A stretch of 64,000 nt of DNA from IMG/VR virus record IMGVR_UViG_3300030102_006934, positions 124,001 through 188,000 of that record, one strand, 5' to 3'. Positions within the stretch are counted from its first letter, which is position 1. The number at the start of each line of letters is the position of its first letter. A model generated the notes under the pieces. The model was given only the letters and a program-made list of their open reading frames with translations. It did no database searches and was not told the DNA's origin. Shown here in pieces: positions 10,359 through 35,781 of this stretch. A program made the translations under genes and the position numbers.

Positions 10359-12824
10359 CTACTTAACGGTGACTACAATATCATCTTTAGAGACACCAAC
10401 TTTTATGGTAGAACCCTGTTTCAATGTGCCTTCTAACATTTTTTCAGCTATTGGATCTTCTACATATTTTTGTATAGCCCTATTCAAAGGTCTAGCCCCA
10501 TACTTTTCATCATAACCTTTCTCCACTAAGAAATCTTTTAGTTTTGATGATACGTTTAATTTATAACCCATTTCAGACATCCTATCAATTAGTTCATTTA
10601 ATGGTAAGTCTATTATTTTCTTAATATCTGATTTATCTAAAGACTTAAAAACTATGATATCATCTAATCTGTTTAAGAATTCTGGTGAGAAGGCTTTTTT
10701 AACAGAATCATTAATAACACCATCTCTTATATCTTCAAGATTATCTATTTTAGCCTTGGTACCAAAACCTACACCTGTACCAAAGTCTTGTAGTTTTCTA
10801 GCCCCTACGTTTGATGTCATTATTATTAGGGTGTTTTTAAAATTTATCTTCCTACCTAAACTATCTGTTAGAAACCCTTCATCTAATACTTGTAGTAAAA
10901 TATTAAATACATCTGTGTGAGCTTTCTCAATTTCATCTAATAGTATAACAGAATAAGGTTTTCTACGTACCTTTTCAGTGAGTTGTCCACCCTCTTCATA
11001 CCCAACGTATCCTGGAGGAGCACCAATTAACTTAGAAGTACTATGTTTCTCCATATACTCAGACATGTCAACCCTAATTATAGAATCTTCCGAACCAAAT
11101 ATATTTTTGGCTAAAGTTTTAGCTAAATGAGTTTTACCAACACCAGTTGGGCCTAGAAACATAAAAGACCCAATTGGTTTATCTTCTGATTTTATACCCA
11201 TTCTATTTCTTCTGATAGCTTTGGTTACTTGTTCAACAGCATCATCCTGACCAATAACTAAACCTTTCAAATCTTTAGACATACTTTTCAGTTTTTCTAA
11301 ATCTGATTGATTTATTTTGTTGACGGGTATACCAGTTATTTTTGACACTACTTCGGCAACATTCTCTGATGTTACTACCCTTCTTTCGGTGTTTATAGAT
11401 TCTAACCACTCGGCCGTTTTGTTCTCTAACTCTTGTTTTAACTTTCTTTCCTCATCTCTCAAATTAGCAGCATCTTCATATTTTTGAGCTTTTATCACCT
11501 TTTTCTTTTTCTCATCTATTTTTAAGATATTTTCTTCTAAAGTGATTATCTCTTTAGGTGCTTCTATTTTAGTTTGACTTCTAGCTCCAACCTCATCTAA
11601 AATATCTATAGATTTATCTGGTTGTTCTCTATCCGTAATGTATCTACCAGCTAGTTTAACACAAGATTTTATAGAATCCTCTGTGTATGATACTTTATGA
11701 TGGTCTTCATAACGGTCTTTTATGTTATTTAATATAGTTAAAGTGTCTTCATTCGATGGTGGGTCTATAAGTACTGTTTGAAACCTTCTAGTCAATGCTC
11801 CATCCTTTTCAAAGTTTTCCCTAAACTCATCTAAAGTTGTGGCTCCTATACATTGAATTTCACCTCTAGCCAAAGCAGGTTTTAATATATTGGAAGCGTC
11901 TAAGGAGCCAGACGAATTACCAGCACCAACCATTGTATGTATTTCATCAATGAATAATATAACATCAAAAGTTTTCTCCAATTCATCCATAATACCTTTA
12001 AGTCTTTCTTCAAATTGGCCTCTGTATTTGGTTCCAGCCACTAGTAAAGCTAAGTCTAATGAGACCACTCTTTTATCAAAAAGTACTCTTGGGCATTTTT
12101 TCTCAATTATTTTCAAAGCTAAACCTTCTACTATTGCGGTTTTACCCACCCCAGGTTCACCAATTAAAAGGGGGTTATTTTTTTTCCTCCTAGATAAAAC
12201 TTGTGTGACCCTCTCTATTTCATCATTACGACCTATTATTGGGTCTATTTTACCTTGTTCAGCCAACTTTGTTATATCTCTGCCAAAATTATCTAAAATA
12301 GGTGTGTCTGTTTTTTCCCCTTTTGGTTTTTTGTAGTAACTACTTTTACCATCATTAAAATCATCAGCTATTCCACTCATATTTACTTCTTTTTTTATTT
12401 GTTTTAATTTTTCTTTAAATGTCTTATAGGTTATGTTCCTATTTGTTAAAACTTGGGTACATCCAAGTTCTTTTATTCTTAATATAGATAACATTAAGTG
12501 TTCAACACCCACATAGGGGTCACCTAATTTATCTGATTCTAACTCACAACTGTTTATTATTAAATTAGATTCACTGCTCAAATATAGTAATTTTTTCTTT
12601 AAACTAGGGTTTTTTACTTGTAATCTTTGGTATCCTTCTAATCTAGATATTAAATCTTCGATATCAAAACCCATGGCCTCAAGGGTTTCTATGACAATAT
12701 TACCCTCATCACTGATTATAGAAATTAATATGTGTACTGGTTCTATCATGTTAGAACCAGAATTAAGTGACTCGGTATAAGACCTTTTAATTATAGATTT
12801 TATTTCTTTATTCATGTTTTTCAT
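10359..12824 (-). CDS. clpC: ClpC-type AAA+ unfoldase (Hsp100)
   Basis: Clp N repeats; GEPGVGKT and GPTGVGKT Walker A motifs; UVR coiled coil QKYEDAANLRD; GVGFG ClpP-docking loop; YGARPL. Confidence 0.92.
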   Translation of the reverse strand: MKNMNKEIKSIIKRSYTESLNSGSNMIEPVHILISIISDEGNIVIETLEAMGFDIEDLISRLEGYQRLQVKNPSLKKKLLYLSSESNLIINSCELESDKLGDPYVGVEHLMLSILRIKELGCTQVLTNRNITYKTFKEKLKQIKKEVNMSGIADDFNDGKSSYYKKPKGEKTDTPILDNFGRDITKLAEQGKIDPIIGRNDEIERVTQVLSRRKKNNPLLIGEPGVGKTAIVEGLALKIIEKKCPRVLFDKRVVSLDLALLVAGTKYRGQFEERLKGIMDELEKTFDVILFIDEIHTMVGAGNSSGSLDASNILKPALARGEIQCIGATTLDEFRENFEKDGALTRRFQTVLIDPPSNEDTLTILNNIKDRYEDHHKVSYTEDSIKSCVKLAGRYITDREQPDKSIDILDEVGARSQTKIEAPKEIITLEENILKIDEKKKKVIKAQKYEDAANLRDEERKLKQELENKTAEWLESINTERRVVTSENVAEVVSKITGIPVNKINQSDLEKLKSMSKDLKGLVIGQDDAVEQVTKAIRRNRMGIKSEDKPIGSFMFLGPTGVGKTHLAKTLAKNIFGSEDSIIRVDMSEYMEKHSTSKLIGAPPGYVGYEEGGQLTEKVRRKPYSVILLDEIEKAHTDVFNILLQVLDEGFLTDSLGRKINFKNTLIIMTSNVGARKLQDFGTGVGFGTKAKIDNLEDIRDGVINDSVKKAFSPEFLNRLDDIIVFKSLDKSDIKKIIDLPLNELIDRMSEMGYKLNVSSKLKDFLVEKGYDEKYGARPLNRAIQKYVEDPIAEKMLEGTLKQGSTIKVGVSKDDIVVTVK

Positions 12825-12932: not shown

Positions 12933-13157
12933 ATGATAAACATCCAAGATAAAAAACTTTTTAATATAACACTAGTTATTAAAAACGATCCAAACGATGA
13001 AGATGGTTTTGATAGTGGTACATATACTGTTGACTTTAAAAACTCTTTTATGTCTATTAATGGTAATAGTATGATTATAGAGACAAAAAATGAAGATAGT
13101 ATAATTGGGAAGGTATTTAATTTAAGGAGCGTTGAATCCTATAAGATATGGCAGTAA
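12933..13157 (+). CDS. hypothetical protein
   Basis: ORF downstream of the host-type promoter. Confidence 0.6.
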   Translation: MINIQDKKLFNITLVIKNDPNDEDGFDSGTYTVDFKNSFMSINGNSMIIETKNEDSIIGKVFNLRSVESYKIWQ

Positions 13158-13447
13158 TAAAAAAAACAGAAAAAGACGGTATTGTTGAGTGTTTAATAGA
13201 TTCTAGTAATATATTACATTCCGAGTATGATAAATCTAAAAATACTTTAAAGTTAACTTTTAAGTCTGGAACTAGGTACGTCTATAAAAATATTATTAAT
13301 AGAGATTACGTTAGATTTGAGGTATCTGAAAGCCAAGGTTCAGTTTTTAATAAAACAATGACTAAATACGATTATAATAAGTTAATCTCTTTAACTGAAG
13401 AGGATTTATTGGTTTTAAAAGAAGAGATTATTAACCATAAAGATTAA
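13148..13447 (+). CDS. KTSC domain protein
   Basis: DSSNI..EYD....L.LTFKSG..YVY.N......F..SESQG..FN. Confidence 0.85.
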   Translation: MAVIKKTEKDGIVECLIDSSNILHSEYDKSKNTLKLTFKSGTRYVYKNIINRDYVRFEVSESQGSVFNKTMTKYDYNKLISLTEEDLLVLKEEIINHKD

Positions 13448-13783: not shown

Positions 13784-14335
13784 TTAATTTTCGTATTCAA
13801 AGTCTAATCCACTTTGTCTTTTTTCATATTCTTCGGAATCTAAACCAGCCTCATACATCCTACCTTCTTCGAAACCTTTATTATATACAATTTCCTTTAT
13901 TTCATTAAATTCTTTTTCGGCTTGGTCTTTACCTTCTTCTTCTCCTTCTTTAAGTCCATCAGCGTAACCTTCATCGTATCCTTCATCGTGAGCGTTGAGT
14001 TTCGCATCAAGCATATCATCTTCACAGTCATCCTTTCCTTCTCTAAAACCTTCATTGTAACCCTCTCTATGACCTTCTCCCCAAGCCAACTGTTTACCAT
14101 CTTCTTGTGAGGTTTCTGCCACTTGTTTTATTATATCGGTCAATAGATTCAGTTCTTTATTTAATAAACCTAATCCATGTACTTTTTTGGCGATATGATT
14201 TAAAAACCAATTGCTGGCCCCATAGTCAGTTATAACATCAATCTTATCCTCTATTTGTTCTACACTAATAGGTTCAACATCTTTAGTCCAATCAAAATCA
14301 TTTTCTTTTAATATTTTCTTAATAGTATTTCTCAT
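13784..14335 (-). CDS. acidic protein with FliH/Yae1-like GxxxG repeats, KILKE leader and DFDWTKDV motif
   Basis: GHREGYNEGFREG, GYDEGYADGLKEG; late motif at 14344-14351 (-). Confidence 0.6.
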   Translation of the reverse strand: MRNTIKKILKENDFDWTKDVEPISVEQIEDKIDVITDYGASNWFLNHIAKKVHGLGLLNKELNLLTDIIKQVAETSQEDGKQLAWGEGHREGYNEGFREGKDDCEDDMLDAKLNAHDEGYDEGYADGLKEGEEEGKDQAEKEFNEIKEIVYNKGFEEGRMYEAGLDSEEYEKRQSGLDFEYEN

Positions 14336-14343
14336 TACATTTA

Positions 14344-14363
14344 ATAAATATTGTGATATTTAT
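14344..14363. promoter_or_regulatory. back-to-back divergent late promoters
   Basis: ATAAATAT-tgtg-ATATTTAT between divergent starts at 14335 and ~14368. Confidence 0.65.
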
Positions 14364-14367
14364 GAAT

Positions 14368-16242
14368 ATGGAGGTAAATGAGAAAGAAATTGAAAAATCT
14401 GATAGATCTATAGATTTATCTGGTTTTAAAGTGCAGGATGAACTTAATCCTAAAATATGGGATGAAGATCAAAAAATGAAATCTGACGTTAGAAAAACTT
14501 TGTTAAAGATTGCTGACGATTATTTTGAGTCTTTGGAATTACCTAAAGTTGATATTGAGGACGTAACCATGACTGGTTCTTTGGCTAATTATAATTGGTC
14601 TAAGTACTCCGATGTTGATTTACATATTGTGGTGGATTATGATGATATTCCAGTAGATGAGGAGTTGGTACAGGACTTTCTTAAATCTAAAAGTTCTAAT
14701 TGGAATAAAGAACATGACGTTACCATTTATGGTTATGATGTGGAATTGTATGTACAAGATATAAACGAACCACATCACTCTACTGGTGTTTATTCCATAT
14801 TAAAAGATGAGTGGGTGACTAAACCCAAAAAACAAAAAATATCATTTAATGACAAATCTGTGAAAGAAAAATCTAACCGTTTAATGGATAGGGTGGAAGA
14901 GATTTATGATGAAATGGATGAGGTAGATAATGAGGTCACAATTAAACGTGTTGATAAATTAACTGAAAAAATAAAAAAAATGCGTCAGTCTGGTCTAGAG
15001 TCTGGTGGTGAGTTTTCTGTTGAAAATATTGTTTTTAAAGTTTTAAGGCGTAATGGTATGTTAGATAGGTTGTATGATATTAAAACTGTGGCCTATGATA
15101 ATTCAGTAACACTAGAATCGACTAAATTAAATACCTTGATAGAGTCAATGTTAGATGATTCTTTGGATTGGATAAGGGATGTCACACCTAAAACTCCTAT
15201 AAAAAAAGAATGTTGTACTGCGTATCAGGGTCATTTTAACATTGTTATGGATTATTTCAATGCTATAACAAGCAAATTAAAATATGGTGATTGGCAGTAT
15301 TCAATAGATGGTCACAGTGGATCGGTTCTTTGGGAATCACCTACCATACCTGACTATGTTTTTTACGCAACACCTTATTGGGAGGGTGTTTCCAATGAAT
15401 TACCTATTGATTATTCGGGAGATATGGGAGACTACGATACTTTAGAAGATGTAGAATTACCAAAGTTCAATTATGAGGAGGATTTAATTAATTGGTTAAA
15501 CTCTGAATACCCAAAGTTGGTTTCTAATAAGTTGAACCACCATGTAACCAATTTTTCAACATATAATGTTGAACACAGGATAAAAAAGGGTAAGTTACTA
15601 GAATTATTTAGTAAAAAAAATATGAGTAAGGGCGAATTAAAAAAAAAATTCAATAATTTTCTTTCTAAAGTAAAACAAGAAGGTGGTGAAACTAAAGAAG
15701 CGTATAAAATTTTAGTAAACTCAATAAAAAGTGGTCAAAACTTATCTAAAGAAGAAAGAGACAAGGTAACCGAACAACTCAAAGATATACTTAAGTTGGC
15801 TGGGTTTACTGTAGCTTCTATATTACCAGGTGGTATCTTATATTTAATGTTATCTAAAGTTGATAAATTTAAAAAGCATTTATTACCATCTTCTTTTCTT
15901 GAAGAAACAAAAGATTTTGATTGGGTAAAGGACGTTAAAGAAACTGATTCATGGAAAAGAATTGATTTTGTGGTGTTTAAGGATGGGGGTTATATTGGTA
16001 CCCCCACTATTCTAAGACAAGATTTTTTTGAAAGGGAGAAAAAAATTGGTAATAGTATTTGGGTTGAAGATGATTATGAAATAGTTGATGAATTTCACGT
16101 TTTATACCCACCTAATAATTTTAGTGGTTCAGCTGTCTCAAACCTTTTGGATGAGTGTTACCATCATTTAAAGTTGGGTGTTATGCCTTCCGATTCTTAC
16201 GTATACAATGAAGAACTTAATAAATTCGAACCTAACACATAA
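14368..16242 (+). CDS. Pol-beta-superfamily nucleotidyltransferase with three further C-terminal modules (start probably 14368, not 14353)
   Basis: MTGSLANYNWSKYSDVDLH (GS..DxD) and third acidic residue in DVELYV. Confidence 0.75.
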   Translation: MEVNEKEIEKSDRSIDLSGFKVQDELNPKIWDEDQKMKSDVRKTLLKIADDYFESLELPKVDIEDVTMTGSLANYNWSKYSDVDLHIVVDYDDIPVDEELVQDFLKSKSSNWNKEHDVTIYGYDVELYVQDINEPHHSTGVYSILKDEWVTKPKKQKISFNDKSVKEKSNRLMDRVEEIYDEMDEVDNEVTIKRVDKLTEKIKKMRQSGLESGGEFSVENIVFKVLRRNGMLDRLYDIKTVAYDNSVTLESTKLNTLIESMLDDSLDWIRDVTPKTPIKKECCTAYQGHFNIVMDYFNAITSKLKYGDWQYSIDGHSGSVLWESPTIPDYVFYATPYWEGVSNELPIDYSGDMGDYDTLEDVELPKFNYEEDLINWLNSEYPKLVSNKLNHHVTNFSTYNVEHRIKKGKLLELFSKKNMSKGELKKKFNNFLSKVKQEGGETKEAYKILVNSIKSGQNLSKEERDKVTEQLKDILKLAGFTVASILPGGILYLMLSKVDKFKKHLLPSSFLEETKDFDWVKDVKETDSWKRIDFVVFKDGGYIGTPTILRQDFFEREKKIGNSIWVEDDYEIVDEFHVLYPPNNFSGSAVSNLLDECYHHLKLGVMPSDSYVYNEELNKFEPNT

Positions 16243-16592: not shown

Positions 16593-18629
16593 ATGAAAAT
16601 GAAAAAAAGTACTTTAAATAAAATGTTAGATTTATCTAATATTAATCCAACAAAAGAAAGTGATGGTTTACCATCTTTTGACTTGGTTAAAGAATGTATT
16701 AATGGTAATACATACGCTATTAGTAGAGAGAATAAAAAATATTATATAAAAGAAAGTAAGACTAAAGAAAAACTAAAAGAGTCCGATTTTGAATATGTAG
16801 GTGGTGTTGCTAATAAAGGTAAAAACAATTTTAAATCTTTTAGTGAGGCGGCAAAACATTTAAATTTAATGTTTGAAGAAATTAATAATCATTTTGATGT
16901 TGGTAATGTTAACATTTTAGAATCCGATTCTTTAAATGAAAAAAAATATGTCTTAAAACTAAACAAAAAAAAATCTAAAAAAGAAGAACCTAAAGAAGTT
17001 GAGTCTTCTGTAGAAGATGACTTCAGTTTTGGTGATGAAGAAGAGAAAGAAGGTGGTGAAGAATCTTTTGACTTTGAATCTGAAGAAGGTGATGAGTCTG
17101 GAGAGGAATCTTTTGACTTTGAGTCTGAAGAAGGTGATGAGTCTGGAGAGGAATCTTTTGACTTTGAGTCTGAAGAAGGTGATGAGTCTGGAGAAGGTGA
17201 TGAGTCTGGGGAAGAGTCTTTTGACTTTGAGTCTGAAGAAGGTGATGAGTCTGGAGAAGAGTCTTTTGATGATACCGAAGATGAGATAAAAGACATACAA
17301 AGCACCACTGGTAAATTAGGTCAACAACTTAGGGACATTGAGGATATTTCTTCTGATATGCAGAAATGGGTTGCTAAATCCGTATTATCAGCTTTAGATT
17401 TAGATACTATGGATTCTGAAGATAAAAAAGATATTATTAAAACTGTTAAAAGTTCCGAAGACAATGGTGATGAAACTGAAGAAGAAGTCCCATCTGAAGA
17501 AATGGAAATGGAGGAAAGTTATGACAACTATATGGATGACGAATTTGATGGTATGAGTCAATATAACTGGGAACCAATTGAATCAAATGATGAATATGAT
17601 TCTTATATGGATGAGGATACTAATATAGATGTTAGTGGAGCTAATAGGTACAACGGTGGGTTAACCAGAGCTTATGAATCAGAAGATAAAGAAGAAGATA
17701 CTGAGATGGGTGGTGATGAAGAAGATAAAGTTGCTAAACCTGAAGATAAGAATGTTGAGGACAAATTACTATTGGATATTGAGGAAGACGAAATGGGTCC
17801 AGAGGAAATGGAAGCTCTTTACGGTCCTAAACCTAGTATGGTTGCTAAATATAAAAGATCACCATATAAAACAGCCTATAAACAAGCTGAAAAAGATATA
17901 TCTAAACATTACCACAAACAATCAGCACCAGGTTATGATTTAGACCCTGTTGAAAAATGGTCAAAACATAAATTACCTTATGATACAAAATTTATGGAAG
18001 AAGGTGATTATATGACTGAAGACCACTTGAACGACCAAATGGAAACCTACGAACAAGAGAAAGCTTACGAAGATATTGAGAAGGTTATGAGAAGATATGG
18101 GATGGGTGTTGAATTAAGAAAAAAAGAAACATCGGAAGACCCAGAAGAAAGTGTAATTTATTTAGATATCATCAATGGTGATGGTAAAAAAGTTCTTGTT
18201 TCTAGGGTTAACTCTGTGGGTGATATTGAAGTTGGTGAAATGAAAGGTAATAACTTTTCGGGTGAACCTGTTGACAGTGTCGAAGATTTTATCGAAATTT
18301 TTGGAGAAGATTTAACTAAAAAAGAAAAACAAGAATTAGAGATAGATATGGTAGAAGATATAGAAATGAGTCCAGCACCACAGAGAACTCCAGATAAAAG
18401 ACCTAGTCAACCAGATACAAAACCTGGTAAACCAGAAAGAAAGTCTCCAAGTGAGAGACCTTCAAGAAGACCATTTACACCACCACCTTCAATAGACCCT
18501 AATGACCCAGACGCATTACCAAATCCAAAAGCGGCTGACGGGCAAGATAAGGTAGATAAAAATACAAGGTACGATAAGGATAATGAAAAGTGGAGTTGGG
18601 AAAAAGGAGATGAAGTAGAGTTTGAATAA
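16593..18629 (+). CDS. very acidic protein, probably prohead core or internal protein
   Basis: E/D-rich, many (I/L/F)xE sites, tandem repeats, Pro-rich tail; upstream of terminase. Confidence 0.55.
   Translation: MKMKKSTLNKMLDLSNINPTKESDGLPSFDLVKECINGNTYAISRENKKYYIKESKTKEKLKESDFEYVGGVANKGKNNFKSFSEAAKHLNLMFEEINNHFDVGNVNILESDSLNEKKYVLKLNKKKSKKEEPKEVESSVEDDFSFGDEEEKEGGEESFDFESEEGDESGEESFDFESEEGDESGEESFDFESEEGDESGEGDESGEESFDFESEEGDESGEESFDDTEDEIKDIQSTTGKLGQQLRDIEDISSDMQKWVAKSVLSALDLDTMDSEDKKDIIKTVKSSEDNGDETEEEVPSEEMEMEESYDNYMDDEFDGMSQYNWEPIESNDEYDSYMDEDTNIDVSGANRYNGGLTRAYESEDKEEDTEMGGDEEDKVAKPEDKNVEDKLLLDIEEDEMGPEEMEALYGPKPSMVAKYKRSPYKTAYKQAEKDISKHYHKQSAPGYDLDPVEKWSKHKLPYDTKFMEEGDYMTEDHLNDQMETYEQEKAYEDIEKVMRRYGMGVELRKKETSEDPEESVIYLDIINGDGKKVLVSRVNSVGDIEVGEMKGNNFSGEPVDSVEDFIEIFGEDLTKKEKQELEIDMVEDIEMSPAPQRTPDKRPSQPDTKPGKPERKSPSERPSRRPFTPPPSIDPNDPDALPNPKAADGQDKVDKNTRYDKDNEKWSWEKGDEVEFE
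17058..17270 (+). repeat. 45-bp coding tandem repeat (ESFDFESEEGDESGE), about 4 copies plus an 18-bp partial
   Basis: gaatcttttgactttgagtctgaagaaggtgatgagtctggagag repeated. Confidence 0.9.
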
Positions 18630-27746: not shown

Positions 27747-28478
27747 ATGAAAATATTAAAACCAGGAGAAGAAGGATATGGATATCTTGTAGAATATGAT
27801 TCAGGGTTCATATCTTCTGAACTAACTTGTCAAGATGGAGTTTGTTCTAACCATAACCTAATAAAAGAGTTTAAATCGGGATTAAGTTTAGGTCAAGATG
27901 GTACATTACCAGATAAAATAGAAATTTATGCCGTACTACAAAAGTGGGGTGTAGAGAACAAGAATGGGAGGGTATACCCAGAAGAGATTTTGAAAAGAGA
28001 ATCTAAGAGATATCAAGAGTTTATAGATATGGGTACGTCTTTGGGGGAATTAAACCACCCAGAGTCTTCAATTATTGATGCTGACAGAGTTTCACATATG
28101 ATTTCAGAGATTTGGTGGAACGGTAGAACACTTATGGGAAAAATGGAGTTAGATACAACACCAGGTTACCTTAAATCAGGTATTATCTCATCTGTAGGTG
28201 ATAAAGTATTAAATATGATTAGGAAGGGTTGGACCGTTGGTATTTCATCTAGAGGAGTAGGTTCTTTAAAGAATGAAAATGGTAAAAATATTGTACAGGA
28301 GGATTTCGAATTAATTTGTTGGGATATAGTTACTTCTCCATCAACACCAGGTTCTTGGATATCTACCTCGGAAAAAGATTTAAAACCTTTCATGGAGTCT
28401 ACCAAAGGGGATAAAACAAAATTAATAATAGAAGATGACTCTGACTTATTAGATAGTTTAGATAAATTTTTATTGTAA
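27747..28478 (+). CDS. prohead core protease (T4 gp21-like)
   Basis: ENKNGRVYP, LGELNHP, VSH, GISSRGVGSL, WDIVTSPSTPG. Confidence 0.95.
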   Translation: MKILKPGEEGYGYLVEYDSGFISSELTCQDGVCSNHNLIKEFKSGLSLGQDGTLPDKIEIYAVLQKWGVENKNGRVYPEEILKRESKRYQEFIDMGTSLGELNHPESSIIDADRVSHMISEIWWNGRTLMGKMELDTTPGYLKSGIISSVGDKVLNMIRKGWTVGISSRGVGSLKNENGKNIVQEDFELICWDIVTSPSTPGSWISTSEKDLKPFMESTKGDKTKLIIEDDSDLLDSLDKFLL

Positions 28479-28591: not shown

Positions 28592-28915
28592 ATGAAAATG
28601 AAAAAAAGAATTGTAAAATTAAACGAATCTGACTTAGAGTTATTAGTCAAAAAAATTATTAGAGAAGAAGAAATGGATCCTAACTCATCTGATGAAGGTG
28701 GTGAAGAAGAGACGGATAACCCAAAAGATGTTGAGATGTTCTTAGACGCTATGAAAAAGTATTTTATGGACAAATACCCAAGGTTCGCTAATAAAATAAA
28801 TACTAGAAAAGAAAAAGCGATGTTGTTAGCTGCCTTAGCTGAAGAATTGGGTGTAGATACTAATTTGATTAATATGGCTAAAGGAGAATTGAAGAAAGCT
28901 GGTTTAGGCAAGTAA
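28592..28915 (+). CDS. hypothetical protein with IVKLNESDL..KKIIREE leader; putative head cargo
   Basis: leader nearly identical to that of 34543. Confidence 0.6.
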   Translation: MKMKKRIVKLNESDLELLVKKIIREEEMDPNSSDEGGEEETDNPKDVEMFLDAMKKYFMDKYPRFANKINTRKEKAMLLAALAEELGVDTNLINMAKGELKKAGLGK

Positions 28916-28916
28916 T

Positions 28917-29438
28917 ATGAATATCCGTAAAATCATAAAAGAAGAACTCCTTAAAGAGGTTGGTGGTTATGATGATTTAAGTGTTATGGGTCAACATGCT
29001 GGAGCTAGTATGGGAGTATTAACTAGTAGTTACCAAATTTTAATAGATCTATTAACAGATATAGCAAACTCACTTTTAGATAGTGAAAAAGGTTATAGTA
29101 AATTCTCTTTATCTAATTCAGTTATAGGTGATTTAGACAAAGTTACATCTGTAGTGATTAGTGATACTGAAAAAATTTTACAGGATTTTACGGAAGACGA
29201 TGTTATAAAAGAAGGTAAAAGATTTATTGCCCACCTTAAATCATTAGTAAAAAGAATTAGGTTAATATCTAACATGGTTTCTACTTACACAAAATCTGAA
29301 TACGAAGAAGAACTAAGAAAATTAGTGATGGAGTTTTTACCTAAAGCTAAAAAATATGGTGATACTTTGATAAAAAGTAATAACATGTTTAAAGGTAGAT
29401 TTTCTAGAGCAACTGGAGGAAATACTTTTTTCAATTAA
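28917..29438 (+). CDS. hypothetical protein with MNIRKIIKEELLKE leader; putative head cargo
   Basis: leader matches those of 1380 and 35503. Confidence 0.6.
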   Translation: MNIRKIIKEELLKEVGGYDDLSVMGQHAGASMGVLTSSYQILIDLLTDIANSLLDSEKGYSKFSLSNSVIGDLDKVTSVVISDTEKILQDFTEDDVIKEGKRFIAHLKSLVKRIRLISNMVSTYTKSEYEEELRKLVMEFLPKAKKYGDTLIKSNNMFKGRFSRATGGNTFFN

Positions 29439-29767: not shown

Positions 29768-29797
29768 AAAAGACTCAGAAATGGGTCTTTTTTTTTT
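29768..29797 (+). terminator. intrinsic terminator, probably bidirectional
   Basis: AAAAGACTCA-gaaa-TGGGTCTTTT then T-run. Confidence 0.8.
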
Positions 29798-30200
29798 AAT
29801 CCCAATATTCTTTAGGTAAACCAATCTTCTCAGCTAATTTCTTAAATAAACCTTCATGTTCTTCTGATTTGGGTAAGTCCTTACCAACTGCAGCATGTAT
29901 AAGTTCATGGGTTATAACCCATTTTAAGTATTCTACATCCTCTAAAGCTTTGGATTTAATACCCATTTTACCATTCTCACCATTTTTTGGGTGGTTAAAT
30001 CCCGCTATCTTACCATCTTTTATAGTATCATCTATTTTAATATCTATTGGTGGTAGTACTAGTTTATCACCTGTGACATCTAGGTAAACCCTTCCCAAAT
30101 CGTCCACAACATTATTTTTTATTTTAGATATCAAATAATTTGGGTTTTCAACACTTGGTACATCAGCTTCTCTCAGTACTTTTTTAATTAAACTTCTCAT
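29796..30200 (-). CDS. SprT-like zinc metalloprotease with MRSLIKKVLRE leader
   Basis: VITHELIHA...HEGLFKKLA; start set at 30200, downstream of the late motif at 30208-30215. Confidence 0.7.
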   Translation of the reverse strand: MRSLIKKVLREADVPSVENPNYLISKIKNNVVDDLGRVYLDVTGDKLVLPPIDIKIDDTIKDGKIAGFNHPKNGENGKMGIKSKALEDVEYLKWVITHELIHAAVGKDLPKSEEHEGLFKKLAEKIGLPKEYWD

Positions 30201-30337: not shown

Positions 30338-31576
30338 ATGGCAAATGAAAGAAAGTCTATCATCGATGAAGCCCTTTTAGAAAGCGCTCAAATTGAGAAA
30401 GCTTTTGAAGCCAACGCAAAAGAAATACTGACTCGTACAATGAGTTCAGAAATTGAAGAAATGGTAAAGGAATCTTTAGAAGGTTCGATTGGTTTAACGG
30501 AGGATGAAGATGAAGAGAAAGATGAGTTAGAGTTAGATCTAGAATTAGGTGACTCTGATGAAATGGATGCCAGCGGTGCTGGTGAAGAAGTTGACCTAGA
30601 AATGGGTGAACTAGAAATGGATGATGAACCAATGGATGGTGAAATCGAAATGGATGATGTTGAAAGTATTGACTTAACAACAACAGAAATGCCTGAAGTA
30701 ATTAACGTATTCAAGAAAATGAGTGACGATGATGAAATAGAGGTTGTAACTGATGGTGGTAATGTTGAGATTAAAGACACAGAAACTGGTGCTGAGTACA
30801 GAATAGAACTTGGTGGTGAAGAAAGTGAAATGGAGGACATGGAAGCAGATATGGTTGACATGGAACCAGAAATGGGAGATATGGACCCTATGGAACTTGA
30901 TAACGAAGATGAGTCTGAAGAAGAAGAAGTCGAATACCAAGTGGTACTAGATGATGAAGATGAAGATGATGAAGATGGAATGGAAGACGAAATGTCTGGA
31001 GGTGATTACATGGATGACATGGAAGAGGGTAAATCCCCAAGAACACTTTCTAAGGCAAGTAAGCAACCTAATAGAAAATCTGCTGATATCAATAGTAATC
31101 GTATGAAAATGGGTGAGTCTAAAAAACCAAAGTTCTTAAAATTAATTAACGAAAACAAAGATCTTAAAAATAAAGTAGGTTCTATCACTAGTGAAAATGA
31201 AACATTAAAAGAAGACTACAACAAAATGGTTGATGCTTTAAAACAATTTAGAGATAAACTTAATGAAGTAGCCGTTTTCAATAGTAATTTAACTTATTCA
31301 GTTAGATTGTTCACAGAGAACACAACTACAAAAGAAGAAAAATTAGAAATAATCAAGAGATTTGATGACGTTAAAACTTTGAAGGAATCTAAAGCTACCT
31401 ATAAAGGTTTAGTAAAAGAGATTTCTAAAAAAGAACCTATCAAAGAATCTGTTGAGGAAAAATTAAATGAAACTAAAACAAGTGGTTCATCAACAGAAAT
31501 TAATGAATCACAAGTGTATGTTAATCCAGAGTTAGAAAAAATGAAGAAACTTTGGGATTACCAATATAAGCACTAA
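30338..31576 (+). CDS. prohead scaffold/core protein (gp22-like)
   Basis: acidic region plus coiled coil, immediately upstream of the MCP; many (I/L)xE sites. Confidence 0.8.
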   Translation: MANERKSIIDEALLESAQIEKAFEANAKEILTRTMSSEIEEMVKESLEGSIGLTEDEDEEKDELELDLELGDSDEMDASGAGEEVDLEMGELEMDDEPMDGEIEMDDVESIDLTTTEMPEVINVFKKMSDDDEIEVVTDGGNVEIKDTETGAEYRIELGGEESEMEDMEADMVDMEPEMGDMDPMELDNEDESEEEEVEYQVVLDDEDEDDEDGMEDEMSGGDYMDDMEEGKSPRTLSKASKQPNRKSADINSNRMKMGESKKPKFLKLINENKDLKNKVGSITSENETLKEDYNKMVDALKQFRDKLNEVAVFNSNLTYSVRLFTENTTTKEEKLEIIKRFDDVKTLKESKATYKGLVKEISKKEPIKESVEEKLNETKTSGSSTEINESQVYVNPELEKMKKLWDYQYKH

Positions 31577-31603: not shown

Positions 31604-33406
31604 ATGGGATATTTATTAAAATCAGGAGAAGTTGGTAACATCGGACTTAAGCACCAAAAAGCTGTTCGTGAAGCGACTGTCTCTAAATGGAATGACTTAG
31701 GGTTCTTAGAAGGACTTAATGGTCACACAAGAGAAAACATTGCTTTGTTATATGAAAACACTGCATCTTCTCTAATTAGCGAAACTACTGACGCGGGGAA
31801 CTCTGGTTCTTTCGAAACTGTAGTTTTCCCAATCGTTAGAAGAGTATTTTCTAAATTATTAGCTAACGATATCGTATCTGTACAAGCTATGAACTTACCA
31901 ATCGGTAAATTGTTCTACTTCGTACCTAAAACATCTGACAGAATTTTCGAAAATGGATGGCCAGCATCAGGTGGTACAGCAAAACATGGTGAACCAATCG
32001 TTACTACTTGTTTAACAGGTGGTGACTGTGACCCAACTACTTACTCTGAATGTGCTAAAAATCTATATGATAGATTCTACAATGACGGAATGTTTGACCA
32101 ATCAAAAGGTAAAATTACTGTTGTTGCGACTAACGCTGACCCAGTTGTTTGGACGGCTTGTACTGACGGTCAAGCTGGTAATGAATTTACTGGTGGTGTT
32201 TCTGCATTTGCTGGTGACGGTTCGGTTAGAACTCAAATCCTTAAAATGTGTGAATTCAATGACGCTGGAGCTGGTAGATTAACTGGTCCTAACGGAAACG
32301 AAATGGATACTGAGGAATTCTTAGCATCTTTAATGGTTACTGTTGATGGTCCTATCGTTGATAAAGATAACCAAGTTATTTTTGAATCTGGTGACCAAGT
32401 ACCAGTAAGAGTTGTTACTCAAAAATACGGAAGAGGTATCGTTGATTACGGTGATATCTGTGACGCTGATGGATGTATATACTTAGAGGCTGATTTAACT
32501 CACCCAGTATGTGCAACTTGTGAAAGTGGTACTTTAGATGGTTACATCGGAGCTACTTCTGGAACAACAGCTATCGTTCCTGGTGTTGCTTCAACTGACT
32601 TAGGTGGAACTAACTTCGTAGTTACTTTCAGACAGTACGCAAACTTAGAACTTGAATCTCAAATGGGAGAAGTTTCTTTCGAATTAGAATCTGTAACTGT
32701 TTCTGTAACAGAAAGAAAACTAAGAGCTACTTGGACTCCTGAGTTAGCACAAGATGTATCAGCATTCCATAACATTGATGCTGAAGCTGAATTAACAGCA
32801 TTATTATCTGAACAAGTTGCGGCGGAAATTGACCGTGAAATCTTAAGAGACTTAAGAACAGGTGCGGCTTGGACATTAAGATGGGATTATGACGGATGGA
32901 AGAGATTACCTTCTGGTCAAGCTGCTTACACTCAAAAAGATTGGAACCAGACTTTGATTACGGCAATCAACCAAATTTCAGCACAAATCCATAAGTCTAC
33001 TTTAAGAGGTGGGGCTAACTTTATCGTGGTTTCTTCTGAGGTATCAGCTATTTTTGATGACTTAGAGTACTTCCACGTATCTAACGCTTCTCCAGAACAA
33101 GATAACTATAACATGGGTATTGAGAGAGTAGGTTCTTTATCAGGTAGATATACTGTATATAGAGACCCATACGCTCCAGCTAACACCGTGTTACTTGGAC
33201 ATAAAGGTCAATCATTATTGGATACTGGGTACATTTACGCACCTTACGTTCCATTACAATTGACACCTACAATGTATAACCCATTCAACTTCGTACCTGT
33301 TAAAGGTATCATGACTCGTTACGCTAAGAAAATGGTTAATAACCGTTTCTACGGAACAATCAACGTTGATGGTATTCGTACATTTGATGTTAGAGAATTA
33401 AGATAA
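31604..33406 (+). CDS. major capsid protein (T4 gp23-like)
   Basis: PIVRRVF..LLANDIVSVQAM..P.G, RKLRATWTPELAQD..AFHNIDAEAEL, YAPYVPL, GIMTRY; likely cleavage at LISE|T. Confidence 0.96.
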   Translation: MGYLLKSGEVGNIGLKHQKAVREATVSKWNDLGFLEGLNGHTRENIALLYENTASSLISETTDAGNSGSFETVVFPIVRRVFSKLLANDIVSVQAMNLPIGKLFYFVPKTSDRIFENGWPASGGTAKHGEPIVTTCLTGGDCDPTTYSECAKNLYDRFYNDGMFDQSKGKITVVATNADPVVWTACTDGQAGNEFTGGVSAFAGDGSVRTQILKMCEFNDAGAGRLTGPNGNEMDTEEFLASLMVTVDGPIVDKDNQVIFESGDQVPVRVVTQKYGRGIVDYGDICDADGCIYLEADLTHPVCATCESGTLDGYIGATSGTTAIVPGVASTDLGGTNFVVTFRQYANLELESQMGEVSFELESVTVSVTERKLRATWTPELAQDVSAFHNIDAEAELTALLSEQVAAEIDREILRDLRTGAAWTLRWDYDGWKRLPSGQAAYTQKDWNQTLITAINQISAQIHKSTLRGGANFIVVSSEVSAIFDDLEYFHVSNASPEQDNYNMGIERVGSLSGRYTVYRDPYAPANTVLLGHKGQSLLDTGYIYAPYVPLQLTPTMYNPFNFVPVKGIMTRYAKKMVNNRFYGTINVDGIRTFDVRELR

Positions 33407-34542: not shown

Positions 34543-34950
34543 ATGAAAAAAGTAATAAAAATAAACGAGTCTCAATTAGAGTACCTAGTTAAGAAAGTTA
34601 TAAAAGAAGAAGAAAAAGAAACTAAAAAAACTACAGTAACTAAACATCCAGCTTATCCAGCCGTGGATAAATTAGAAAGAGCTTTAGAAGATTTAAAGAT
34701 GGAGTTTAAAGATAGTATTGCTAATGCAGTATCTGGTTCTGATGGTTATCACAGTGAAATAGATAAGTTTTCTGAAGATTTTGGTAAATTTATTACTAAG
34801 GTTTCTAAAATGAAAAGTAAAATCAATGATTATCAAATAGCGAATAAAGATAAGGAGGTGGCTGAAGCTAAGAAACGGAAAGAAAAACAGCGTCAGTACC
34901 AAAATTATATGAGAGAAAAGGCTAGAAATGAAGGTCGTAACTATTATTAA
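34543..34950 (+). CDS. hypothetical protein with VIKINESQL..KKVIKEE leader; putative head cargo
   Basis: late motif at 34517; leader shared with 28592. Confidence 0.6.
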   Translation: MKKVIKINESQLEYLVKKVIKEEEKETKKTTVTKHPAYPAVDKLERALEDLKMEFKDSIANAVSGSDGYHSEIDKFSEDFGKFITKVSKMKSKINDYQIANKDKEVAEAKKRKEKQRQYQNYMREKARNEGRNYY

Positions 34951-35502: not shown

Positions 35503-35781
35503 GTGAGAAACTTAATCCGTAAAATATTAAAAGAAGAATCAGATAAGCAAACTGATTTAGCCAACTCTAATAGTACTGAACGTAATATATGTGATGATTT
35601 TAGTGTTGATACTTACGAGGAATTGATTGATTTGATTAATAAAGCACACGTCTCAAAAGAAGATGACCCAAAAATAGAAAAATTACTAATTCAGTTGAAG
35701 AAGGATAATGACCGATTGGGTAATGATTTGGATAACTTAAACACCTATCAACATAAGATAGCTAATTTACTGTGTAAATAA
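35503..35781 (+). CDS. hypothetical protein with MRNLIRKILKEE leader (GTG start)
   Basis: leader shared with 14335 and 30200. Confidence 0.6.
   Translation: MRNLIRKILKEESDKQTDLANSNSTERNICDDFSVDTYEELIDLINKAHVSKEDDPKIEKLLIQLKKDNDRLGNDLDNLNTYQHKIANLLCK

What the first reader, a model, noticed from the sequence alone, without database searches (positions are those of the whole stretch)
14276..16242. Nucleotidyltransferase looks like a polyprotein punctuated by xxE sites and a DFDWxKDV motif
Seen: after the NTase domain (~aa 1-250) come TLE..LIE|SMLDDSLDWIRDVTP (~15154-15183), LLE|LF and FLEE|TKDFDWVKDVKE (15913-15936). The divergent neighbour begins ILKE|NDFDWTKDVEP (14299-14276). The D-(F/L)-D-W-x-(K/R)-D-V motif therefore occurs three times, each just after a putative gp21 site, in two genes sharing a back-to-back late promoter. 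Inference: prohead protease splits the 625-aa product into about four proteins, and DWxxDV is a second signal retained at the mature N-terminus, for example for ejection order or for docking to the portal or ClpC. I know of no described role for this motif.
Basis: partly seen in the sequence, partly recalled or inferred. Interest (0 to 1): 0.75.

Follow-up and report, generated by a model that had tools for sequence, protein, structure and literature searches.

The report
Conserved junction tag in phage polyproteins
A distant T4-like jumbo phage marks about 50 small, unrelated protein modules, either strung together in polyproteins or encoded singly, with one conserved tag, [I/L]-x-E-S…D-F-D-W-x-x-D, which most likely marks cargo that is loaded into the phage head and cut apart by the head protease; the cutting itself has not been shown.

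Summary
All three motif copies sit at the stated coordinates. Genome-wide (380 kb, one contig) there are about 50 copies in 26 ORFs, which make up 9.8% of the proteome; shuffled proteomes give about one.

- **Two contexts.** N-terminal copies read M-x-[IL]-[KR]-K-I-[IL]-K-E-E-x-x-DFDW. Internal copies read [IL]-[NK]-E-S-x-DFDW-[VI]-[KR]-D-[VI]-x-P.
- **What it precedes.** The motif sits in low-confidence linkers in front of unrelated folds.
- **Level of selection.** Synonymous codons vary freely, so selection acts on the protein.
- **Module shuffling.** Homologues keep the nucleotidyltransferase and add one to nine modules in varying order.
- **Phage type.** The phage has a T4 gp21-type protease and a gp23-type capsid protein.
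- **Link to head genes.** The same leader, without DFDW, heads small genes next to the protease gene.
- **Expression class.** Motif genes use the promoter box of the head genes, never the host-like box of the replication genes.

Best reading (confidence about 0.5): these are capsid-targeted, protease-processed polyvalent cargo. No tool result shows cleavage or packaging. The specific role of DFDW is unknown, and portal or ClpC docking has no support. I rate it a new variant of a known kind.

The parts
14368..16242 (+). Long ORF. Layout: nucleotidyltransferase, junction 1, module A, module B, junction 2, module C. It is 629 aa from the GTG at 14353, 626 aa from the ATG at 14362 and 624 aa from the ATG at 14368; 14368 is the likely start.
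   Evidence: The same 623-626-aa architecture is seen in about 18 independent metagenome clusters at 79-90% identity, so the open frame is not an assembly artefact.
14425..15081 (+). Pol-beta-type nucleotidyltransferase domain, with the GS...DxD signature at 14575-14625.
   Evidence: phrog_36119 at E = 2.5e-58, covering aa 25-243 of a 247-position profile. Weak Pfam hits to MTPAP-like and NTP_transf_2, both below cut-off. Stand-alone homologues exist in Lak phages, S-CRM01 and Maribacter phage Molly.
15136..15189 (+). Junction 1: L-I-E-S-MLDD-S-L-D-W-I-R-D-V-T-P.
   Evidence: In the AF2 model this stretch lies in a low-pLDDT region directly before a confident domain.
15190..15591 (+). Module A, an alpha/beta domain. 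It is related to module 1 of the 921-aa polyprotein at genome 116.6-119.3 kb.
   Evidence: pLDDT 72-86. BLAST family link. In homologues this module sits before or after module B, or is absent.
15592..15609 (+). K-L-L-E-L-F, a candidate (I/L)-x-E site at the boundary between modules A and B. It has no DFDW.
   Evidence: In homologues the boundary reads GPLPE-S, and ORFs that end with module A stop right after that Glu.
15610..15894 (+). Module B: two helices plus a hydrophobic hairpin (LAGFTVASILPGGILYLML, 15796-15852). It is kept in almost all homologues, including the minimal forms of 349-371 aa.
15895..15942 (+). Junction 2: F-L-E-E-T-K-D-F-D-W-V-K-D-V-K-E.
   Evidence: pLDDT is 39 for this block, and the next block is 89.
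15943..16239 (+). Module C, a beta-rich domain of about 100 aa.
   Evidence: pLDDT 71-91. Present or absent among homologues.
13784..14335 (-). Divergent 183-aa gene. Its leader plus motif, MRNTIKKILKE-N-DFDWTKDV, covers 14335-14276. A helical domain and acidic EGYxEG repeats follow.
   Evidence: In an alignment of 46 homologues, residues M1, I5-K10, N12 and W16 are invariant although overall identity falls to 35%. AF2 gives a helix at 2-11, motif pLDDT about 62 and domain pLDDT 86-90.
14344..14363 (.). Two back-to-back ATATTTAT promoter-like boxes: 14344-14351 for the minus gene and 14356-14363 for the plus gene.
27747..28478 (+). T4 gp21-type prohead serine protease.
   Evidence: Pfam Peptidase_S77, 99 bits, E = 4.5e-29.
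28592..28915 (+). Small head-cluster protein starting MKMKKRIVKLNE-S-DLELLVKKIIRE-EE. It carries both junction types in tandem, without DFDW.
   Evidence: Paralogues sit next to the protease gene in two related contigs.
28917..29438 (+). Small head-cluster protein with the leader MNIRKIIKEE and no DFDW.
29796..30200 (-). 134-aa protein with the leader MRSLIKKVLRE and an HELIH zincin motif. It is a possible second processing protease.
   Evidence: Weak SprT-like Pfam hit, 23.3 bits against a 25.6-bit cut-off.
30338..31576 (+). Acidic scaffold-like protein with I-K-E-S, L-N-E-T and I-N-E-S sites near its C-terminus.
   Evidence: It occupies the same position as the acidic protein before the capsid gene in Flavobacterium phage immuto.
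31604..33406 (+). gp23-type major capsid protein. The likely propeptide site is L-I-S-E/T at aa 57-61.
   Evidence: Pfam Gp23, E = 9.9e-63. Sequence. The immuto homologue has I-V-S-E-A at the same place. The site itself is inferred.
34543..34950 (+). Paralogue of the 28592 protein, starting MKKVIKINE-S-QLEYLVKKVIKE-EE.
35503..35781 (+). Small protein with the leader (V/M)RNLIRKILKEE-S and no DFDW.

Best explanation
The motif is the junction tag of a lineage-specific system of head-delivered cargo.

The proposed mechanism has four steps:
1. Small acidic modules, mostly 100-140 aa and mutually unrelated, are made late in infection. Each is either a single protein behind a basic amphipathic leader of about 10 aa (M-x-[IL]-[KR]-K-I-[IL]-K-E-E), or a bead on a polyprotein separated from its neighbours by [IL]-[NK]-E-S.
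2. The leader works like the T4 capsid targeting sequence and carries the protein into the prohead core.
3. The gp21-type protease cuts after the Glu of each [I/L]-x-E. This removes the leader and separates the modules.
4. The separated modules are small enough to be ejected with the DNA, like T4 internal proteins and Alt.

D-F-D-W-[VI]-[KR]-D-[VI]-x-P would then be the first residues of each released module. Its own role is not resolved; it could be a P'-side or exosite determinant of cutting, or a handle used inside the head or after ejection.

In the finding's ORF this would yield the nucleotidyltransferase and modules A, B and C.

Shown by tool results: the tag, its two contexts, protein-level selection, module shuffling, the presence of the protease, the shared promoter class, and the same leaders on head-cluster genes. 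Inferred: capsid targeting, cleavage and ejection.
For: 1. The phage is T4-like. It has an S77 protease and a Gp23 capsid protein in this window, and terminase and portal genes. Gene order matches Flavobacterium phage immuto.
2. T4 gp21 cuts after L/I-X-E. A 10-residue N-terminal capsid targeting sequence ending in that site is what loads otherwise unrelated internal proteins. IPI is small enough to pass the portal while folded (PMC9026906; PMC3012670; Alt sites ITE-6 and LTE-619 in PMC5694885).
3. [ILVM]-x-E precedes 45 of 50 motif copies, against a 9.6% background.
4. Every free-standing motif protein carries the 9-11-aa leader. The same module family occurs once with the leader (MNIKRIIKEEMDDFDW) and once internally (PINESDDFGW) in adjacent genes.
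5. The leader without DFDW heads small genes packed around the protease, scaffold and capsid genes. Five of 13 leader-only hits lie in 7 kb of the 380-kb genome. In two related contigs the genes right after the protease start MKKIIKLNE[NS]D[IL]ExLVKKIIKE[ED], which is both junction types in tandem.
6. The predicted capsid propeptide site (LISE/T) and the scaffold C-terminal sites (IKES, LNET, INES) have the same form as the junctions.
7. Promoter class. An ATATTTAT box 12-26 nt before the ATG precedes the terminase, portal, protease and scaffold genes. It also precedes 14 of 26 motif genes; the other 12 have no box of their own, and most directly follow the preceding gene. No motif gene has the Bacteroidetes-type ATATTTG box. 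That box precedes the primase, thymidylate synthase, UvdE, a nuclease and a phage sigma-70-family gene. A polyprotein in a relative has the same box.
8. The motif lies in low-confidence linkers in front of different folds.
9. Codon choice at motif positions matches genome usage, so the constraint is on the peptide.
10. The only two motif-bearing relatives large enough, or lucky enough, to test also carry the S77 protease.
11. The cargo list includes a Pol-beta nucleotidyltransferase and a T4-type lysozyme. Both are domain types listed for virion-delivered polyvalent proteins (PMC5512222).
Against: - There is no direct evidence of cleavage or of presence in virions. No cultured relative carries the motif.
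- The protease-junction co-fold gave no verdict.
- The ATATTTAT class covers about 38% of genes once operons are counted, so it is necessary for the model but not specific to it.
- (I/L)-x-E is short and common in this Lys/Glu/Ile-rich proteome.
- DFDW is more conserved than the putative cleavage site, and T4 gp21 is not known to need P' residues, so the model does not explain the most conserved part.
- The modules are strongly acidic (median pI 4.7), unlike the basic T4 internal proteins.
- Module B has a membrane-like hairpin.
- Nearly 10% of the proteome would be a large amount to package.
- The nucleotidyltransferase ORF itself lacks the long leader; it has only M(NM)EVNE-K.
Confidence: 0.5

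Rival explanations
1. The proteins stay intact. The tag is a short linear motif in flexible linkers, repeated so that many modules bind one common partner. The partner could be a phage hub, a chaperone or unfoldase such as the phage ClpC-like ATPase, or a host protein. The leader helix would belong to the same binding element.
For: DFDW is the best conserved part of the tag, and the Trp is invariant in the motif alignments. It lies in low-confidence, probably flexible segments. Acidic-aromatic peptides are typical docking motifs (general knowledge). A ClpC-like gene lies 1.5 kb away.
Against: This does not explain why [ILVM]-x-E is fixed 4-8 residues upstream. It does not explain why free-standing modules always gain a 10-aa leader. 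It does not explain why that leader alone marks small genes in the head cluster. No partner was identified.
Confidence: 0.2
2. The polyproteins are cut at the tag by a different enzyme: the small leader-bearing HExxH zincin in the head cluster (29796-30200, minus strand) or a host protease. Cutting might happen only after delivery, as proposed for the metallopeptidases of polyvalent proteins. DFDW, with Phe as P1', would be the real recognition site.
For: The 134-aa protein has an HELIH motif, a weak SprT-like hit and the same leader. An SprT-like gene lies near a 13-copy polyprotein in a relative. Zincin peptidases are the commonest processing domain of polyvalent proteins (PMC5512222). This reading would explain why DFDW is so strongly conserved.
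Against: The Pfam hit is below the cut-off. The relative's SprT-like protein lacks the leader. No peptidase domain is embedded in any motif ORF. The conserved Glu position fits gp21-type specificity.
Confidence: 0.15
3. The tag matters mainly as DNA. It would be a short in-frame homology that lets recombination insert, delete and reorder module cassettes, with no function as a peptide.
For: Module number and order differ among close homologues, and the same modules appear in different polyproteins. One metagenome protein carries a 12-aa motif-like insertion inside a module, which looks like a recombination scar.
Against: Synonymous codons at motif positions vary as in the rest of the genome (for example GAT/GAC 24/14, AAA/AAG 9/7). 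The amino acids stay fixed across homologues of only 35% identity. The selected object is therefore the peptide. Shuffling is more likely a by-product.
Confidence: 0.05

Closest known systems
T4 capsid targeting sequence and internal proteins (IPI, IPII, IPIII, Alt) processed by the gp21 prohead protease
   Same: Both are in T4-type phages with an S77 protease. Both have an N-terminal leader of about 10 aa ending in (I/L)-x-E. In both, the leader is the only thing shared by otherwise unrelated, rapidly turning-over small proteins. Enzymes occur among the cargo, as Alt does in T4. Small module size suits passage through the portal.
   Different: Here many modules are concatenated into polyproteins of up to 1,577 aa, with internal [IL]-x-E-S sites. 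A second, stronger motif (DFDWxxD) follows the site; T4 has nothing like it. The modules are acidic, not basic. The scale is about 50 modules, against three to five in T4. No experimental evidence exists here.
Polyvalent proteins of phages and conjugative elements (Iyer et al. 2017, PMC5512222)
   Same: Single polypeptides combine 2-15 unrelated domains. They are linked to virion or late genes, predicted to be delivered with the DNA and to be cut into functional units. Pol-beta nucleotidyltransferase and lysozyme are among the listed domain types.
   Different: Those proteins usually carry their own peptidase domain, and no conserved junction peptide is described for them. Here no embedded peptidase was found, almost all modules are uncharacterised, and every junction carries the same tag.
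Propeptide and inner-body protein processing in phiKZ, 201phi2-1 and SPN3US
   Same: These are jumbo phages in which a gp21-related protease cuts many head and ejection proteins after Glu in a three-residue motif. They also have paralogous ejection proteins with conserved N-terminal propeptides.
   Different: Their motif is S/A/G-x-E. They have no DFDW-like element and no bead-like polyproteins. They are a different phage lineage.

Membership tests
T4-type capsid-targeted internal proteins | The phage encodes a gp21-family (Peptidase_S77) prohead protease. | tested here: met
   99 bits, E = 4.5e-29, at window 27747-28478.
T4-type capsid-targeted internal proteins | A short N-terminal leader of about 10 aa ending in L/I-x-E. 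| tested here: met
   Of the 20 N-terminal copies, nearly all have the M-x-[IL]-[KR]-K-I-[IL]-K-E(E) form, 9-11 aa long. The nucleotidyltransferase ORF itself has only M(NM)EVNE.
T4-type capsid-targeted internal proteins | The protein is present in the virion with the leader removed after Glu. | not testable with these tools
   This needs virion mass spectrometry. No cultured relative carries the motif.
T4-type capsid-targeted internal proteins | Expressed together with the head genes. | tested here: inconclusive
   Motif genes share the ATATTTAT box with the head genes, and none has the host-like box. The class is broad, however, and its timing is inferred rather than measured.
Polyvalent proteins (Iyer et al. 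2017) | Two or more unrelated domains in one polypeptide of a phage or conjugative element. | tested here: met
Polyvalent proteins (Iyer et al. 2017) | An embedded processing peptidase domain (zincin, assemblin-like and others). | tested here: not met
   No peptidase family hit in 11 motif ORFs. Only separate genes were found: the S77 protease and a small HExxH protein.
Polyvalent proteins (Iyer et al. 2017) | A characteristic conflict-domain repertoire. | tested here: inconclusive
   A nucleotidyltransferase and a lysozyme are present. All other modules have no Pfam hit, and fold and Atlas searches gave nothing.
Pol-beta superfamily nucleotidyltransferase | The hG[GS]x9-13Dx[DE] active-site signature plus a family profile match. 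| tested here: met
   GSLANYNWSKYSDVD at 14575-14619. phrog_36119 at E = 2.5e-58. The Pfam hits are below cut-off.

The most novel reading that the evidence does not exclude
The tag is a two-part 'cut-and-carry' signal that defines a new class of phage cargo. The upstream [I/L]-x-E is cut by the head protease. The retained N-terminal DFDWxxD handle then has its own function, such as holding modules in an inner body, ordering their exit, or engaging a common target after ejection. Because every module carries the same junction in frame, the phage can shuffle cargo cassettes much as exons are shuffled, which would give a fast-evolving injected arsenal worth about 10% of its coding capacity.
Probability: 0.25. 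Interest if true: 0.85.

Novelty: new variant of a known kind. Interest (0 to 1): 0.65.

Why it matters
If this reading is right, T4-like jumbo phages have turned the capsid targeting sequence into a general packaging grammar for dozens of interchangeable injected modules. That would give a sequence rule for picking out the injected proteins, probably anti-defence or takeover factors, of an uncultured marine phage clade. The same rule finds 430 protein clusters in public metagenomes. It would also provide a natural design for loading multi-protein cargo into T4-type heads. Even if cleavage proves wrong, a peptide tag conserved on about 50 unrelated domains in one genome is an unexplained and testable signal.

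Tried and rejected
- **Co-fold of the protease (aa 1-215) with junction 2 (aa 498-540).** No verdict, score 0.00. This is evidence neither way.
- **Fold searches of the 626-aa model.** Foldseek against PDB gave nothing at E <= 0.001. VIA wide gave a best Z of 6.7, below the noise level stated for such models.
- **Atlas feature search of modules A and C.** No usable hit.
- **T4 late promoter TATAAATA.** Only 19 genes have it within 80 nt upstream, and they show no link to structural genes, so it is not the signal here.
- **tblastn of an eight-copy polyprotein against 50,697 phage records.** No match.
- **Motif profile against five specific records** (Flavobacterium phage immuto, Microcystis phage Mel-JY01, Maribacter phage Molly, LR756508, LR745206). 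No match, while the positive control found 52 copies in the phage's own genome and 36 in a relative.
- **Literature search for 'DFDW'.** Nothing relevant to phages.
- **Gene fission at the junction.** A relative with a 366-aa nucleotidyltransferase simply lacks modules A and C and has no separate gene for them.
- **A purely DNA-level element.** Rejected on codon evidence.
- **A shared-fold cap.** Rejected on the models and on the lack of homology between modules.
- **Docking to ClpC or portal.** Not tested; only one complex job was available.
Full report
**What is in the sequence.** The window is bases 124001-188000 of a single 380,343-bp virus contig with 31% G+C. The ORF in question runs from 14353/14362/14368 to 16242 on the plus strand. 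A 183-aa gene runs divergently from 14335 to 13784. All three motif copies are at the stated places:
- L-I-E-S-MLDD-SLDWIRDVTP at 15136-15189.
- F-L-E-E-TK-DFDWVKDVKE at 15895-15942.
- MRNTIKKILKE-N-DFDWTKDV at 14335-14276 on the minus strand.

The N-terminal 250 residues are a Pol-beta-type nucleotidyltransferase. The evidence is phrog_36119 at E = 2.5e-58 over a 247-position profile, a GS...DxD signature, and Pfam hits below cut-off.

**The motif is a genome-wide system, not a local oddity.**
- The strict pattern D[FL]DW.[KR]D occurs 15 times in the genome and never in 200 shuffled proteomes. A relaxed pattern occurs 48 times against a mean of 1.1.
- A profile built from the copies finds 50-52 copies in 26 ORFs, which together make up 9.8% of the proteome.
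- The copies fall into two contexts. Twenty lie 13-34 residues into the ORF behind a basic amphipathic leader, with consensus M-x-[IL]-[KR]-K-I-[IL]-K-E-E-[LMF]-[ND]-DFDW-[VI]-[KR]-D-[VI]. Thirty are internal, with consensus [IL]-[NK]-E-S-[DN]-DFDW-[VI]-[KR]-D-[VI]-x-P.
- The internal copies punctuate polyproteins of up to 1,577 aa.
- [ILVM]-x-E sits 4-8 residues before the Trp in 45 of 50 copies, against 9.6% for other Trp residues.

**What lies between the tags.**
- Segments between tags are most often 100-120 aa, with a median of 135. They are strongly acidic: median pI is 4.7, and 90% are below pI 6, against 53% of all proteins.
- They are mostly unrelated to one another by BLAST.
- A few small families link free genes to internal modules. 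The clearest case is a module that starts MNIKRIIKEEMDDFDWVRNIEVDTDLTPAQ in one gene and ...KPINESDDFGWVRDIKIDYDLTPAQ inside the next gene. The leader context and the internal context are therefore interchangeable for the same module.
- Pfam recognises almost nothing in ten further motif ORFs. The exception is a T4-type lysozyme at the end of one of them.
- Only the finding's ORF has a membrane-like segment.

**Homologues of the finding's ORF.**
- A word-index search found 1,484 relatives.
- The nucleotidyltransferase, up to ...YDKSVTLES, is constant. After it come one to nine modules in varying number and order.
- Every inserted module starts with the tag. One 1,072-aa relative, for example, has INESDFDW, ITESNDFDW, LSESNDFDW, INESNDFDW and so on.
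- Modules A and B swap order between relatives.
- The minimal form, 349-371 aa, is the nucleotidyltransferase plus module B.
- ORFs that end with module A stop right after the Glu of GPLPE. Where module B follows, the sequence reads GPLPE-S.
- Outside this clade the nucleotidyltransferase is a free protein. The match ends at query residue 246-287 in Lak phages, cyanophage S-CRM01 and others. The Maribacter phage Molly gene is 265 aa.

**Peptide or DNA?** At motif positions the synonymous codons are used about as in the rest of the genome. Examples are Asp GAT/GAC 24/14, Lys AAA/AAG 9/7, and Val spread over four codons. Across 46 homologues of the 183-aa neighbour, identity falls to 35%, yet M1, I5-K10, N12 and W16 are invariant. 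Selection therefore acts on the peptide. A DNA-only recombination signal is rejected as the main explanation, although the shared junction probably does help shuffling.

**Part of a fold, or a linker?** Two AF2 models were made with alignments.
- In the long ORF (626-aa numbering), modules A (about 278-400) and C (531-626) have pLDDT 72-91. The motif residues 267-276 and 518-527 fall in blocks with pLDDT 32-55 and 39.
- In the neighbour the leader is a helix at residues 2-11, the motif block has pLDDT 62, and the following helical domain has 86-90.
- The motif thus precedes a helical, an alpha/beta and a beta-rich domain, and elsewhere a lysozyme. It is not a buried element of one shared fold.
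- Caveat: the alignments are shallow, and the nucleotidyltransferase part of the model is poor.

**The phage and its protease.**
- The genome encodes a Peptidase_S77 (T4 gp21) protease at 27747-28478 and a Gp23 capsid protein at 31604-33406.
- Terminase and portal genes lie upstream, and an acidic scaffold-like protein sits between protease and capsid.
- The gene order is that of Flavobacterium phage immuto. Immuto and Microcystis phage Mel-JY01 are the nearest cultured relatives, at 42-43% capsid identity.
- In T4, gp21 cuts after L/I-X-E. The first 10 residues of IPIII are a capsid targeting sequence that suffices to load foreign proteins. The internal proteins share nothing but that leader (PMC9026906; PMC3012670; PMC5694885).

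**Links between the tag and head assembly.**
1. The leader without DFDW heads small genes packed around the protease, scaffold and capsid genes: 28917, 29796 (minus strand) and 35503. Two paralogues, at 28592 and 34543, start MKxxxxK[LI]NE-S-x-LExLVKK[IV]I[KR]E-EE, which is both junction types in tandem. Five of the 13 leader-only hits lie in this 7-kb stretch of a 380-kb genome.
2. In two related contigs, the genes directly after the protease gene are tandem paralogues of the same kind.
3. The likely capsid propeptide site (L-I-S-E/T, with I-V-S-E-A in immuto) and three sites in the scaffold C-terminus (IKES, LNET, INES) have the same form as the junctions. These sites are inferred, not measured.

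**Promoter classes.**
- An ATATTTAT box lies 12-26 nt before the start codon of 89 genes. About half of all genomic occurrences of the box are in that position.
- It precedes the terminase, portal, protease, scaffold and other head-cluster genes. It also precedes 14 of the 26 motif genes. The other 12 have no box of their own, and most directly follow the preceding gene.
- A second box, ATATTTG, matches what I recall as the Bacteroidetes TAnnTTTG -7 element; I did not check this against the literature. It precedes the primase, thymidylate synthase, UvdE, a PD-(D/E)XK nuclease and a phage sigma-70-family gene. It precedes no motif gene.
- A 13-copy polyprotein in a relative has the same ATATTTATTAGTATG arrangement.
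- The simplest reading is that a host-type early class includes a phage sigma factor, which then drives a late class containing both head genes and motif genes. The timing is inferred. With operons counted, the late class covers about 38% of genes, so this evidence is necessary but not specific.
- For the finding itself, the two boxes sit back to back at 14344-14351 and 14356-14363.

**Distribution.**
- The motif profile finds 430 clusters among 1.84 billion representative proteins, with up to 13 copies in one protein.
- A related 210-kb contig has 36 copies, and it carries the S77 protease.
- There are none in immuto, Mel-JY01, Molly or two uncultured megaphages. An eight-copy polyprotein finds nothing in 50,697 phage records.
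- Some homologues come from Tara assemblies, as their source labels show.
- The tag is therefore specific to an uncultured clade of low-G+C T4-like phages, some of them from marine samples. The promoter box, if I recall the Bacteroidetes element correctly, suggests Bacteroidota hosts.
- A full-text search for the motif found nothing on phages.

**Interpretation.**
- The best-supported model is that these are capsid-targeted cargo proteins, in the sense of T4 internal proteins and Alt, built as polyvalent proteins in the sense of Iyer et al. (PMC5512222). The head protease would cut them at each [I/L]-x-E into modules small enough to leave through the portal. I put this at about 0.5.
- It does not explain DFDW, which is the most conserved part. 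Two readings could. In one, the leader-bearing HExxH protein in the head cluster is the processing enzyme and DFDW is its site. In the other, the tag is a docking peptide on uncleaved proteins.
The single co-fold available, protease with junction, gave no verdict.
- The modules' own functions are unknown; fold and Atlas searches gave nothing usable.

**Verdict.**
- Novelty: a new variant of known kinds, namely the T4 capsid targeting sequence with internal proteins, and polyvalent proteins. The features not previously described are the conserved junction peptide and the scale of about 50 modules.

Noticed in passing
window 10359-12824 (-): The phage encodes an 821-aa ClpC/ClpB-type double AAA+ ATPase, with Clp_N, AAA, AAA_lid_9, AAA_2 and ClpB_D2-small domains. 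It contains a GVGFG stretch resembling the ClpP-docking loop of ClpC (the resemblance is from memory). Its upstream region has an ATATTTAA variant of the late-type box.
   Followed up: partly
window 29796-30200 (-): A 134-aa protein inside the head gene cluster has a capsid-targeting-like leader (MRSLIKKVLRE) and an HELIH zincin motif. Its SprT-like Pfam hit is weak. It is a candidate packaged metallopeptidase.
   Followed up: partly
window 16593-18629 (+), repeats at 17054-17272: A very acidic 678-aa protein lies two genes downstream, after a 98-aa ORF. It carries about five tandem 45-bp repeats encoding GEESFDFESEEGDES. The ES-FDF-ES core faintly echoes the ES...DFDW junction. The gene is syntenic in relatives (681 aa in L049).
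   Followed up: partly
whole genome; for example window 12933, 33685 (-); genome 291143-291958: There are two upstream box classes. ATATTTAT precedes head genes and many other genes. ATATTTG resembles what I recall as the Bacteroidetes TAnnTTTG element and precedes replication and repair genes and a phage sigma-70-family gene with regions 1.2, 2 and 4. The boxes lie only 12-26 nt before the ATG, which implies very short 5' leaders.
   Followed up: partly
genome 113578-114792 (locus L005): A 404-aa protein has the leader plus DFDW tag at its N-terminus and a T4-type lysozyme domain (Pfam PF00959) at its C-terminus.
   Followed up: partly
window 13784-14335 (-): Behind its tag and helical domain, the 183-aa neighbour has acidic EGYxEG-type repeats. 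Some homologues carry a precomputed Yae1_N (PF09811) label, and one source calls its homologue FliH-like. The divergent pairing with the nucleotidyltransferase gene is conserved in relatives (L049; a Tara contig).
   Followed up: partly
proteins P0136 versus P0127 (metagenome relatives): One polyprotein has a 12-residue motif-like insertion (IDLQWIKDTKSE) in the middle of a module that is otherwise collinear with its relative. This may be a recombination scar or an assembly chimera.
   Followed up: no
genome 75494-76948 and 308515-309933 (loci L040, L044): Two paralogous genes with DUF2828 and DUF7788 domains, one of them with a VWA-like region, lie behind the early-type box. I recall these domains as TROVE/Ro60-like.
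   Followed up: no
window 13148-13447 (+): A small KTSC-domain protein (Pfam PF13619, E = 7e-11) is encoded convergently between the neighbour's operon and the ClpC-like gene.
   Followed up: no
window 15796-15852 (+): Module B of the long ORF has a hydrophobic hairpin (LAGFTVASILPGGILYLML). It is the only membrane-like segment in any of the 26 motif ORFs, and it is kept in nearly all homologues, so the nucleotidyltransferase may be membrane-tethered.
   Followed up: partly
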